Origin: Euprymna scolopes
Lineage: Eukaryota
Reading direction: 5' to 3' (one strand)
Length of the DNA: 64,000 bases
Assembly (NCBI GenBank): GCA_053919585.1
Contig: CM132814.1
Part shown: piece by piece, positions 29,431-31,695 of the stretch
Layout: each line of letters opens with the position of its first letter
Position numbering within the stretch: position 1 is the first letter of the stretch
Position numbers and translations under genes: made by a program
The notes under the pieces: model-generated
Databases searched by the model: none
What the model was told of the DNA's origin: nothing
The model's input: the letters and a program-made list of their open reading frames with translations, nothing else

Positions 29431-31375
29431 GTGTTTATCTATTTCATTTTTACTTTAAATTTTCTGTAAGGAATGCTTAGAGTGTTTAGTAACTAATCTC
29501 TTCTTGGGCGGAAAAATATGAAAAAATATCGTAAAACATGAATTTAACCTGAAAAATATATTTTTAAATGGCGCGATGCTATCGCGCAGTGCCATTTTAT
29601 GCATCCTAGATCAATAGCTATTTTAAAATGTGTGTGTATTTTTCGTACGTCGCTATTTGTAATTAGGGTATTCTATTAAATTAAATCTGTACGCTCTTTT
29701 TTTCAATCGTAAAGTGTCAAAATATTTACAAAAGAGCCTTCCCTCCTCAATGTAAAAGAATATTTACAAACCCCCTTTTCCACTCGAACCCATTGTAAAA
29801 CATCATCTTGCATTATTTATTTTTTGTTAATAAATATTAAGAATCCACCGTCGATAAATCACTTAAATGTACCAGTTTTTAAGGTTTTCGAGTGTGCAGA
29901 AAACGAAAATAACATTTAAAAAAAAAACTCCAGCATACGAATAGATTCCAAGATCTGAGTAAATGATATTTTTTTTTCAAAAGTCGGAGATCACTTTTTT
30001 TTATTATAATAAAACCTGAAATTTACACCTACTTTATGGTTCAATTTTGTTTGGTGTTTTTGGGTAGAGGCTGATACACGTGAAATCGACCAATGATGCC
30101 TGGTAGCCCCCCCCCATATTTGGTGCGCAGTTTACAATAATTGTGTTCATTATAAGCTGAACCTCATAAACAAAACGTGTTTATAAAGTGGATGTTCATT
30201 GTAAGTTGCATTATTATATACACATTGTAAACGTAATGTGTTTTTTACTGCATACCAGAAAACCTATAAAAGGGAGAATTTTTAAGAATTTTAAAGATGG
30301 GTGGAATGTCGAATATATATTCATATGTAACCTTTTTATTTGTTTAATATGAAGTTAAATAAAATTTTAATTACATCCTTACGTGTGTAATAATAGTGTG
30401 ATGTATTTTTTTCAACTTGGAGGGGTTTTAATATGAACAAACATGCAAACATATGACTCGAAAACAAAATGAAACGAAATATTCTCCCATACGTCCCTAG
30501 TAATATTATATTAACAACGAAATACTATTGTGGTAACTTTATTACTGAAGTAAAAAACTTATATTCAATAAATTGTTAAGTACATAAGAACATGGCAAAC
30601 CATAGCGTGCTTTAATTTAAGCTATTAAAGGTTTGTGAATCATTTATAATATGAACAAATTGTAAGTGAAAACGTCGAATTTGCAACGCATAAAAACAAA
30701 TGAAATTAAATATTTTTTTCGAAAGCGTCCTTAATACCCGTTGAGTAAAAACGAATTATTGTCTCTTTATCTTCATTACTACATTGAAATACTATTTATA
30801 ATGATTTTTCACGGTAACTTTATTACTGAAATAAAATATAAATAATTATTATTTGTCACTGTAAATGAAGTAAATGTAAACCTCAAAGAAGAATATGTTC
30901 GGCAAAAGTCTATTTAGTAACATAAAACGACAAATAAGTACTAAAGGAGGGTGGTTGTTTCCTAGTGATTTTAGAAACATATAAATGCAAATAGTACTGG
31001 CAAAAATTTTAAAGAAGTGGGAATTATTATTTTTTCCGGAGATTCCGACGTTTGTAATCGGGGTATTTAATGTGTAATTATTCGACAAACAGAAACCATG
31101 TTTATAAATACACCCGGTGTAGAATAGAGGCTTAACACTTTTTTAAGAATATAGCGGATCATTTTAGGTGCTTCCTCTGACGAGGAACATGACGCTCCTA
31201 GGAATAAACGTAATGTTTTAATATTACGGAATAATGTGTCTTTAATAGAGTTCTATTGTTATAAAATGTTATTGCAAAATGCGTAAACCTAATAGATTAT
31301 ATGTGGAATCTCTTGGTGTAAACCTACGGTATTTTGGTCCAAAGAGGTTAAAACGGTGCCTCTTGTAAAATATAC

Positions 31376-31430
<55 letters not shown>

Positions 31431-31454
31431 TAAGTTATAAAATATACATATATA

Positions 31455-31695
31455 TATTAAGTTATAGAATATATATGACGATTAAGCTACACTGAATATT
31501 CCGCGTTTCATCCACACTAGCACTCTTCAGGCTTATTCGCATAAGCCTGAAGAGTCCTAGAGTGGATGAAACCATATATATTCTATAACTTACTAACTAG
31601 CTCTACTACGTATTGACCACTTTTTTAGTAAATACTTAAAGTTTACGCATAAATCTATACTTTCGTACATTAATTTTATGTGAGTAAATTAAGTA
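31455..31695. repeat. Small palindromic-head repeat, copy 2
   Basis: 32-bp arms 31505-31536 / 31541-31572 (2 mismatches) plus outer arms taagttatagaatatatatg / catatatattctataactta. The tail is similar to 7585-7715. Confidence 0.85.
31481..31536 (-). ncRNA. Type I hammerhead ribozyme (minimal, palindromic stem III)
   Basis: Minus strand: UAAGC-CUGAAGA-GUGCUAGUGUGGAU-GAAAC-GCGGAAUAUUCAGU-GUA-GCUUA. This gives stem I UAAGC/GCUUA, the conserved CUGANGA and GAAA core and a GUA cleavage triplet. Stem II is intact (GUCC..GGAU) in the mirror arm. Confidence 0.72.

What the first reader, a model, noticed from the sequence alone, without database searches (positions are those of the whole stretch)
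31455..31695. Palindromic mini-element carrying a type I hammerhead ribozyme, with a mirror-image partial copy on the other strand
Seen: the minus strand 31536-31481 folds into a type I hammerhead with stem I UAAGC/GCUUA, CUGAAGA, stem II, GAAAC, a stem III whose apex is the palindrome GAAUAUUC, and a GUA triplet. The motif is mirrored around the hairpin centre at 31537-31540. The plus arm has the better stem II (GUCC/GGAU) but has lost stem III by a ~27-nt deletion. The copy at 7541-7581 keeps GAAAC-AUGGAUUAUUCUGU-GUA-GCUUAA, with mostly pairing-compatible changes in stem III (G-U to A-U, C-G to U-G, G-A to G-U, one new U-U near the apex). Known: minimal hammerheads with palindromic stem III occur in Penelope pLTRs and non-LTR retrozymes and can cleave as dimers. 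Inference: this is a ~200-bp non-autonomous ribozyme-bearing retroelement family in this genome.
Basis: partly seen in the sequence, partly recalled or inferred. Interest (0 to 1): 0.8.

Follow-up and report, generated by a model that had tools for sequence, protein, structure and literature searches.

The report
Penelope-like retrotransposon end with hammerhead ribozyme
The palindrome is two truncated, head-to-head copies of the 3' end of a Penelope-like retrotransposon (Hydra clade) inserted in a (TA)n microsatellite, each carrying that element's hammerhead ribozyme motif; it is real, but it is the known insertion pattern of this transposon class.

Summary
Window 31483-31535 (minus strand) carries a type I hammerhead motif. 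It is mirrored about 31537-31540, and the plus arm lacks 27 nt that include helix III and the cut site.

The stretch is one of roughly 10^5 copies of the 3' end of a Penelope-like element (PLE) of the Hydra clade. Longer copies join the motif to an ORF remnant with the Hydra signatures: a CxCX5C linker, a GIY-YIG nuclease without CCHH, and CxxC/CxH motifs. They also show variable 5' truncation, (TA)n targets and an optional 104-nt tail.

The palindrome is the usual PLE by-product of two independently 5'-truncated copies joined head to head. It is not a designed mini-element.

The hammerhead is supported by:
- Homologous elements from other organisms carry one at the same place, with covarying helices.
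- A covariance model built only from those scores the family consensus at 28 bits (E about 1e-5).
- Among subfamilies only N7, pair 10.1-11.1, loop II and one mismatched pair vary.

Rfam misses the motif. RNA-seq shows no read ends at the predicted cut, so catalysis is untested. This window's two copies look impaired.

The scan noted the same family elsewhere in this genome (s1-288474).

Verdict: a new member of a known kind, of modest interest.

The parts
31364..31454 (.). Left (TA)n target microsatellite, with a short degenerate duplicate of the arm's outer end at 31430-31454
   Evidence: both ends of nearly all copies abut (TA)n
31455..31536 (-). Inverted, 5'-truncated copy of the PLE 3' end, without tail
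   Evidence: matches consensus positions 32-117 of the 3' region in reverse orientation
31483..31535 (-). Hammerhead motif, type I, complete but with a G.G mismatch in helix II; predicted cut between 31488 and 31487 on the minus strand
   Evidence: by reading; model R1 17.9 bits, full model length
31537..31540 (.). Junction of the two copies (TCGC here, GCGC in the family), the hot spot where both cDNAs end
   Evidence: 23 of 126 arms start at this position, with a 4-nt overlap
31541..31595 (+). Direct, 5'-truncated copy of the PLE 3' end; a 27-nt internal deletion after 31572 removes helix III and the cut site
   Evidence: R1 only 11.4 bits
31596..31694 (+). 'Tail': optional ~104-nt extension beyond the proximal 3' end, present on the direct copy only; contains the motif ATTGAGCAC that also follows the hammerhead in related elements
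   Evidence: copies with and without tail; compare with PMC11167929
31695..31717 (.). Right (TA)n flank
7500..7709 (+). Second, older copy of the same structure: inverted arm (7500-7540, its left part masked by N), direct arm with helix III and GUA (7541-7607), tail (7608-7709)

Best explanation
The stretch is an insertion product of a Penelope-like retrotransposon (PLE) of the Hydra clade. The element's RT/GIY-YIG protein cuts a (TA)n microsatellite. It primes reverse transcription of element RNA from both DNA strands, starting at one of two sites near the RNA's 3' end: a proximal site that gives no tail and a distal site that gives the 104-nt tail. Both cDNAs stop early (5' truncation) and are joined head to head, often at a self-complementary GCGC. 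This leaves an inverted copy, a direct copy and a tail, which reads as a palindrome. Each copy carries the element's 3'-UTR hammerhead. That ribozyme is type I, with a fully palindromic 9-bp helix III suited to pairing between two ribozymes, G.U or A-U at positions 10.1-11.1, and cleavage after GUA. It lies 33 nt from the proximal 3' end and about 30 nt downstream of a TATA-like box. Shown here: family structure, link to the ORF, truncation pattern, and conservation and covariation of the motif. Inferred from the literature: priming on both strands and the two RT start sites. Not shown: that this RNA self-cleaves. In short palindromic copies a transcript would fold into a long hairpin rather than a hammerhead. 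In this window one arm has a helix II mismatch and the other lacks helix III, so these two ribozyme copies are probably dead passengers.
For: Family size: at least 3026 first-look candidates. Five copies turned up in about 130 kb of unrelated sequence, which suggests about 10^5 copies.

Longer copies L091-L096 have variable 5' ends. In L095 and L096 they continue upstream into an ORF remnant with:
- the linker CNCRHRTLC (CxCX5C);
- GIY-YIG (Pfam PF01541, E 1.4e-3) with no CCHH between GIY and YIG;
- CxxC and CxH around the conserved E and N.
These are exactly the Hydra-clade features in PMC8557442 section 11. That section also reports (TA)n targets, hammerheads, an upstream inverted 5'-truncated copy and a one-sided tail.

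Protein homologs: 2528 hits. Full-length ones are about 700 aa with DKT, RW and YRDD motifs.

Hammerheads sit in the 3' UTRs of homologs from other organisms (L098, L100, L102, L103, L104, L106). On their alignment 93% of cells pair. The covariation score is 0.805 against 0.23 shuffled (0 of 500) and 0.04-0.14 when slid.

Model R1, built from those six only, scores our family at 28.2-28.6 bits, E about 1e-5. Canonical hammerheads of this genome score 36-40 bits as controls.

Among 126 arms the only common variants inside the motif are N7 (A71/G14/C7/T3), 10.1 (G55/A38, opposite U), loop II and the G.A mismatch pair. The 13 core positions vary by 1-8%.

Across 50 head-to-head pairs the two arms have independent truncation points but shared subfamily markers.

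Two consensus arms co-fold into the dimeric hammerhead at -30.6 kcal/mol.

PMC11167929 reports that a PLE protein cleaves and extends both strands and that two RT start sites explain the tail.
Against: - No Rfam hammerhead model reports the motif even at E<=10 on a 74-nt stretch.
- RNA-seq raw reads from two species show no pile-up of read ends at the predicted cut, with even depth on both strands that follows copy number.
- The monomer's minimum-energy fold (-12.8) is not the hammerhead (-9.6).
- G10.1-C11.1, called highly conserved in PLE hammerheads (PMC4209133), is G.U or A-U here.
- Only 1 of 126 arms starts at the predicted cut site, so cleaved RNA is not the usual template.
Confidence: 0.85

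Rival explanations
1. A self-propagating ~250-bp non-autonomous palindromic element (retrozyme-like or SINE-like). It amplifies as a unit and needs its two hammerheads.
For: About one fifth of arms share the same apex. Any RNA carrying the 3' region could in principle be mobilised in trans. A 2026 preprint argues that animal retrozymes are non-autonomous PLE derivatives.
Against: Truncation points of the two arms are independent and widely spread. The shared apex occurs on at least 6 subfamily haplotypes that also exist in long copies. The short copies lack the TATA/CCAAT region. There is no tandem, unit-length organisation. Element ends do not coincide with the cut site.
Confidence: 0.1
2. 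The motif is homologous to PLE hammerheads but is catalytically dead or nearly so in this family, carried along only because it lies in the RNA region the RT recognises.
For: No read ends at the cut. The 10.1-11.1 pair is non-canonical. The alternative fold is more stable. PLE hammerheads have low activity in vitro (PMC4209133). Hammerhead mutants did not affect insertion in vitro (PMC11167929).
Against: The core is kept while N7 takes all four bases among subfamilies. G.U at 10.1-11.1 recurs in related elements L104 and L106. An active PLE hammerhead also left no RNA-seq ends.
Confidence: 0.25
3. A foldback or MITE-type DNA transposon (TA target, long terminal inverted repeats) in which a hammerhead-like string arose by chance.
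For: TA flanks and long inverted repeats. The loose descriptor gives about 400 chance hits per genome. Rfam is silent.
Against: Variable 5' truncation with a constant 3' end. Continuity with an RT-family GIY-YIG ORF. A one-sided tail. The independent model hit and covariation in homologs.
Confidence: 0.02

Closest known systems
Hydra-clade Penelope-like elements (Craig et al. 2021, PMC8557442)
   Same: C-terminal GIY-YIG without CCHH, CxCX5C linker, CxxC/CxH motifs, (TA)n insertion, a hammerhead near the 3' end, 5' truncation, an upstream inverted copy and a one-sided tail.
   Different: The tail here is about 104 nt, against the 30-40 nt reported for PLEs. Copy number is very high. The RT portion of this family was not retrieved. 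The host appears to be a large (5.9 Gb) invertebrate genome.
Minimal PLE hammerheads that act as dimers (Cervera and de la Pena 2014, PMC4209133)
   Same: Type I. Palindromic 15.2-16.2 and helix III. Located in the PLE terminal repeat. The paper reports 'dual' motifs close together on opposite strands.
   Different: Helix III is a long 18-nt palindrome (9 pairs, including one G.A mismatch) instead of 1-2 bp. Pair 10.1-11.1 is G.U or A-U instead of G-C. Rfam RF00163 does not score it.
Poseidon PLE of Anolis (Frangieh et al. 2024, PMC11167929)
   Same: Two alternative 3' ends, matching the two RT start sites that define a 'tail'. Extension from both DNA strands fits the head-to-head copies. No RNA-seq ends at the hammerhead cut.
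   Different: A different PLE clade. There the hammerhead overlaps the ORF start. No biochemistry was done here.
Non-LTR retrozymes of animals
   Same: Hammerhead-bearing, PLE-related non-coding repeats.
   Different: Retrozymes are head-to-tail tandem units bounded by cut sites and give circular RNAs. These are dispersed head-to-head truncated copies whose ends do not match the cut site.

Membership tests
Hammerhead ribozyme, type I | Catalytic core C3 U4 G5 A6 N7 G8 A9 ... G12 A13 A14 ... A15.1-U16.1, H17 | tested here: met
   CUGAAGA, GAAA and GUA are present in the window's minus arm and in the family consensus. Core positions show 1-8% minor alleles while N7 shows all four bases.
Hammerhead ribozyme, type I | Three helices around the core, helix I open, supported by covariation | tested here: met
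   Family consensus: helix I 5 bp, helix II 4 bp, helix III 9 positions including one mismatch. Six homologous elements covary in all three helices. Model R1 aligns the family over its full length at 28 bits.
Hammerhead ribozyme, type I | Match to the curated Rfam model RF00163 at gathering score | tested here: not met
   No hit even at E<=10. The same model also misses the hammerheads of the related elements, so this reflects model sensitivity.
Hammerhead ribozyme, type I | Site-specific self-cleavage after H17 | tested here: inconclusive
   Raw RNA reads show no ends at the predicted cut. The same was reported for an active PLE hammerhead.
Penelope-like element, Hydra clade | C-terminal GIY-YIG lacking CCHH, CxCX5C linker, CxxC and CxH around the conserved E and N | tested here: met
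   Translations of L096:344-574 and L096:578-772, Pfam GIY-YIG, definition.
Penelope-like element, Hydra clade | PLE reverse transcriptase with DKT and RWK motifs upstream of the nuclease | tested here: inconclusive
   Seen in full-length homologs P0151 and P0238 (DKT, RW, YRDD). The RT part of this family itself could not be fetched.
Penelope-like element, Hydra clade | Insertion into (TA)n, 5' truncation, inverted upstream copy, optional tail | tested here: met
Non-LTR retrozyme | Head-to-tail tandem units each bounded by hammerhead cut sites | tested here: not met
   Copies are dispersed and head to head. Only 1 of 126 arms starts at the cut site.

The most novel reading that the evidence does not exclude
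The roughly 10^5 head-to-head PLE ends make this genome unusually rich in near-perfect 80-250-bp inverted repeats. When transcribed within host RNAs these would form long dsRNA hairpins, possible substrates for RNA editing or small-RNA pathways. Separately, the unusually long palindromic helix III might let this PLE hammerhead cleave as a monomer, unlike typical minimal PLE hammerheads.
Probability: 0.15. Interest if true: 0.5.

Novelty: new member of a known kind. Interest (0 to 1): 0.3.

Why it matters
The finding turns an odd-looking 'palindromic ribozyme element' into an annotated repeat class: truncated, inverted ends of a Hydra-clade Penelope-like element that may account for some 10^5 insertions in (TA)n microsatellites of a 5.9-Gb genome. 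It also documents a hammerhead variant that Rfam's model does not detect (long palindromic helix III, G.U or A-U at 10.1-11.1). Hammerhead censuses based on Rfam would therefore undercount PLE ribozymes in such genomes. Finally, the pattern of junctions (independent truncation points, a GCGC hot spot, a tail on one side only) is genomic support for the two-strand, two-start-site model of PLE integration.

Tried and rejected
1. 'Left arm always intact, right arm always deleted' looked like a directional copying signature. It was a selection artefact of querying with this window's copy. A sample chosen by the tail alone shows intact palindromes, truncations on either arm and much longer copies.

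2. Helitron, MITE and foldback readings. There are no TC..CTRR ends and no matching terminal inverted repeats beyond the palindrome itself. The tail is one-sided and truncation is from the 5' side only.

3. Shared 3' tail with the tRNA-hammerhead SINE of this genome: no similarity.

4. Stem III 'compensatory' changes in the 7541 copy are CpG decay.

5. RNA evidence for a transcription start after the TATA box or for cleavage: none. Depth follows genomic copy number on both strands.

6. A joint in RNA reads at L094 1177/1178 to 1198 on opposite strands lies within 1 nt of the predicted cut. It comes from one or a few loci and can equally be read as a copy end abutting a short (TA)n, so it is left unexplained.

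7. MAFFT could not align our long helix III with the short ones (A2), so the model search was used instead.

8. Supplements of PMC8557442 are not held, so the published Hydra hammerheads could not be compared directly.

Full report
**What is in the window.**
- On the minus strand, 31536-31481 reads UAAGC, CUGAAGA, GUGC..GGAU, GAAAC, a 14-nt stretch with the apex GAAUAUUC, GUA and GCUUA.
- The region is an inverted repeat with arms 31494-31536 and 31541-31583, 84% complementary and 4 nt apart.
- (TA)n lies on both sides.
- Rfam finds no hammerhead at gathering score in the window. It also finds none at E<=10 on the 321-nt region, where only hairpin-like miRNA models respond.

**It is a very large repeat family.**
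- The own-genome search gave at least 3026 first-look candidates, with the scored copies 80-89% identical.
- Copies also turned up by accident in loci fetched for another reason, and twice in this window. That is about one per 26 kb, or roughly 10^5 copies in 5.9 Gb. This estimate is rough, from five events.
- The first alignment suggested an always-intact left arm and an always-damaged right arm. That was an artefact of selecting copies by similarity to this window's copy.
- A sample selected by the tail alone contains perfect palindromes, copies reduced to the tail, copies with only the outermost 20 nt of each arm, and copies in which the arms are separated by more sequence that continues the inverted repeat.

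**The longer copies show what the element is.** Loci L091-L096 share a constant 3' end but start at different points upstream, which is 5' truncation.
- In L095 and L096 the sequence continues into a degraded reading frame. It contains a CxCX5C motif (CNCRHRTLC) and a GIY-YIG nuclease core, VVY...YYVGMT...FKPRYYDH (Pfam PF01541, E 1.4e-3).
- The frame has no cysteine pair between GIY and YIG. It has a CxxC and a CxH on either side of a conserved E and N, and then a stop.
- About 400 nt of 3' UTR follow, with two CCAAT-like boxes and TATAAAAAC. The hammerhead motif lies about 30 nt downstream of that box, and 33 nt further comes (TA)n or a 104-nt extension followed by (TA)n.
- Craig et al. 2021 (PMC8557442) define the Hydra clade of Penelope-like elements by these protein features. 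They also report insertion into (TA)n and readily detected hammerheads.
- For PLEs in general they describe strong 5' truncation, an inverted 5'-truncated copy next to the 5' end, and a tail at one end only.
- An exhaustive protein search found 2528 relatives. Full-length ones are about 700 aa on contigs of 2.2-3 kb and carry the DKT and RW motifs and a YRDD box upstream of the nuclease.

**The palindrome is an insertion by-product.** I extracted 126 arms and 50 head-to-head pairs from all held sequence.
- The two arms of a pair start at independent positions of the element, for example 61 and 1, 71 and 35, 33 and 49, or 34 and 83.
- The arms of a pair share the same subfamily markers, so both were copied from the same source variant.
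- There is a hot spot: 23 of 126 arms begin at a self-complementary GCGC, and pairs of this class overlap by those 4 nt. This gives the perfect 'mini-palindrome' of the window.
- That class occurs on at least six marker haplotypes, which are also found in long copies. It therefore arose repeatedly rather than amplifying as one family.
- The inverted copy ends at the proximal 3' end without a tail. The direct copy usually carries the tail.
- This fits the biochemistry reported for a Poseidon PLE (PMC11167929). That protein cleaves and extends both DNA strands, and reverse transcription starts at two sites whose spacing defines the optional tail.
- These mechanistic steps are taken from that paper and were not shown here.

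**Is the hammerhead real?** On its own the motif is weak evidence. A loose descriptor hits about once per 30 Mb of random sequence, and the window's own arm fails it because of a G.G mismatch in helix II. Three independent lines support it.

- *Position and covariation in relatives.* 3' UTRs of homologous elements from other organisms carry a hammerhead at the equivalent place. These are L098, L100, L102, L103 (a bryozoan genome), L104 (a tandem pair of elements) and L106. Their helix I, II and III sequences differ, and all have GAAAC and a palindromic helix III. On their alignment 93% of cells pair. The covariation score is 0.805 against 0.23 for shuffles (0 of 500) and 0.04-0.14 for slid partners.
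- *An independent model.* A covariance model built only from those six finds the canonical hammerheads of this genome at 36-40 bits. It finds intact copies of our family over the full model at 28.2-28.6 bits (E about 1e-5 in 113 kb), the window's minus arm at 17.9 bits and its deleted plus arm at 11.4 bits.
- *Variation within the family.* The only frequent variants inside the motif are N7 (A71, G14, C7, T3), position 10.1 (G55, A38, opposite an almost invariant U), loop II, and the single mismatched pair of helix III. The 13 core positions show 1-8% minor alleles. Reads from a second species show the same pattern: N7 A to U in 37%, 10.1 G to A, and the helix III A to U change that turns G.A into G.U.

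G.U at 10.1-11.1 also occurs in L104 and L106, so it looks like a clade trait. Two consensus arms co-fold into the dimeric hammerhead through helix III at -30.6 kcal/mol. The monomer prefers another fold, -12.8 against -9.6.

**What is not shown.**
- Catalysis is untested.
- Raw poly(A) RNA-seq reads of the window's presumed species (three runs) and of a related species (one run) were laid on L094:900-1318. They show no pile-up of ends at the predicted cut (1178|1179) and no start after the TATA box. Depth is equal on both strands and rises toward the 3' end as genomic copy number does.
- This weighs against efficient cleavage of the bulk of mostly decayed copies. It is not decisive, because the same absence was reported for a PLE hammerhead that cleaves in vitro.
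- Only 1 of 126 arms begins at the cut site, so cleaved RNA is not the usual template.
- In this window both ribozyme copies look impaired. A transcript through the palindrome would form an ~80-bp hairpin rather than a hammerhead.

**Comparison and verdict.**
- Hammerheads in PLE terminal repeats have been known since 2014 (PMC4209133). That paper already notes dual motifs close together on opposite strands.
- Hydra-clade PLEs with (TA)n targets and hammerheads have been known since 2021.
- The features specific to this family are the long palindromic helix III, the non-canonical 10.1-11.1 pair (with the resulting blindness of Rfam's model), the ~104-nt tail and the copy number.
- I file it as a new member of a known kind.

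Noticed in passing
G000, more than 70 places, e.g. C7:153143286-153146864, C3:36915533-36921114; contig L097: A second, very young Hydra-clade PLE family. Protein P0003 is 100% identical at more than 70 places, with open frames up to 738-768 aa and no stops, and many copies sit as inverted or tandem pairs. It is only about 52% identical to the nuclease remnant of the family studied here. It looks currently or recently active.
   Followed up: partly
L035-L043 (G000:C8:10432194-10435515) and L031-L060: Canonical type I hammerheads (RF00163, 50-57 bits) sit in 410-bp head-to-tail arrays. Each unit ends in a tRNA-like segment. This is a retrozyme-like or SINE-like family unrelated in sequence to the one studied.
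   Followed up: partly
window 11415-11458 (+) and 11745-11788 (+): Model R1 gives 21.0 bits (E 0.0023) and 10.3 bits here, inside the tRNA-headed SINE-like repeats that another first-stage note flagged. They are degraded hammerheads below Rfam's threshold.
   Followed up: no
L094:1023-1105 and equivalent positions in L076, L089, L091-L096: Two CCAAT-like boxes and TATAAAAAC lie about 30 nt upstream of hammerhead helix I, in the PLE 3' UTR. L102 has TATAAATA about 45 nt upstream of its hammerhead. This could be the internal pLTR promoter, but RNA reads gave no evidence of a start site.
   Followed up: partly
L094:1177-1198 (reads of X42, X40, X41): An abundant RNA-read joint on opposite strands lies within 1 nt of the predicted hammerhead cut. 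There are also reads in which a direct copy seems to begin at or next to the cut site after an inverted outer arm. They come from one or a few expressed loci and are unexplained.
   Followed up: no
tail, window 31596-31694; L103:3770-3800; L104:2730-2790; L102:1370-1385: The motif (A)TTGAGCAC(T) recurs downstream of the hammerhead in Hydra-clade elements of different hosts. In the tandem L104 it lies in the 5' UTR before the next ORF, so the 'tail' may correspond to the start of the next unit.
   Followed up: partly
whole genome (header): The genome has 5.9 Gb in 925 contigs, with at least 46 chromosome-scale pieces, and (TA)n microsatellites that serve as landing sites for at least three hammerhead-bearing repeat families.
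   Followed up: no
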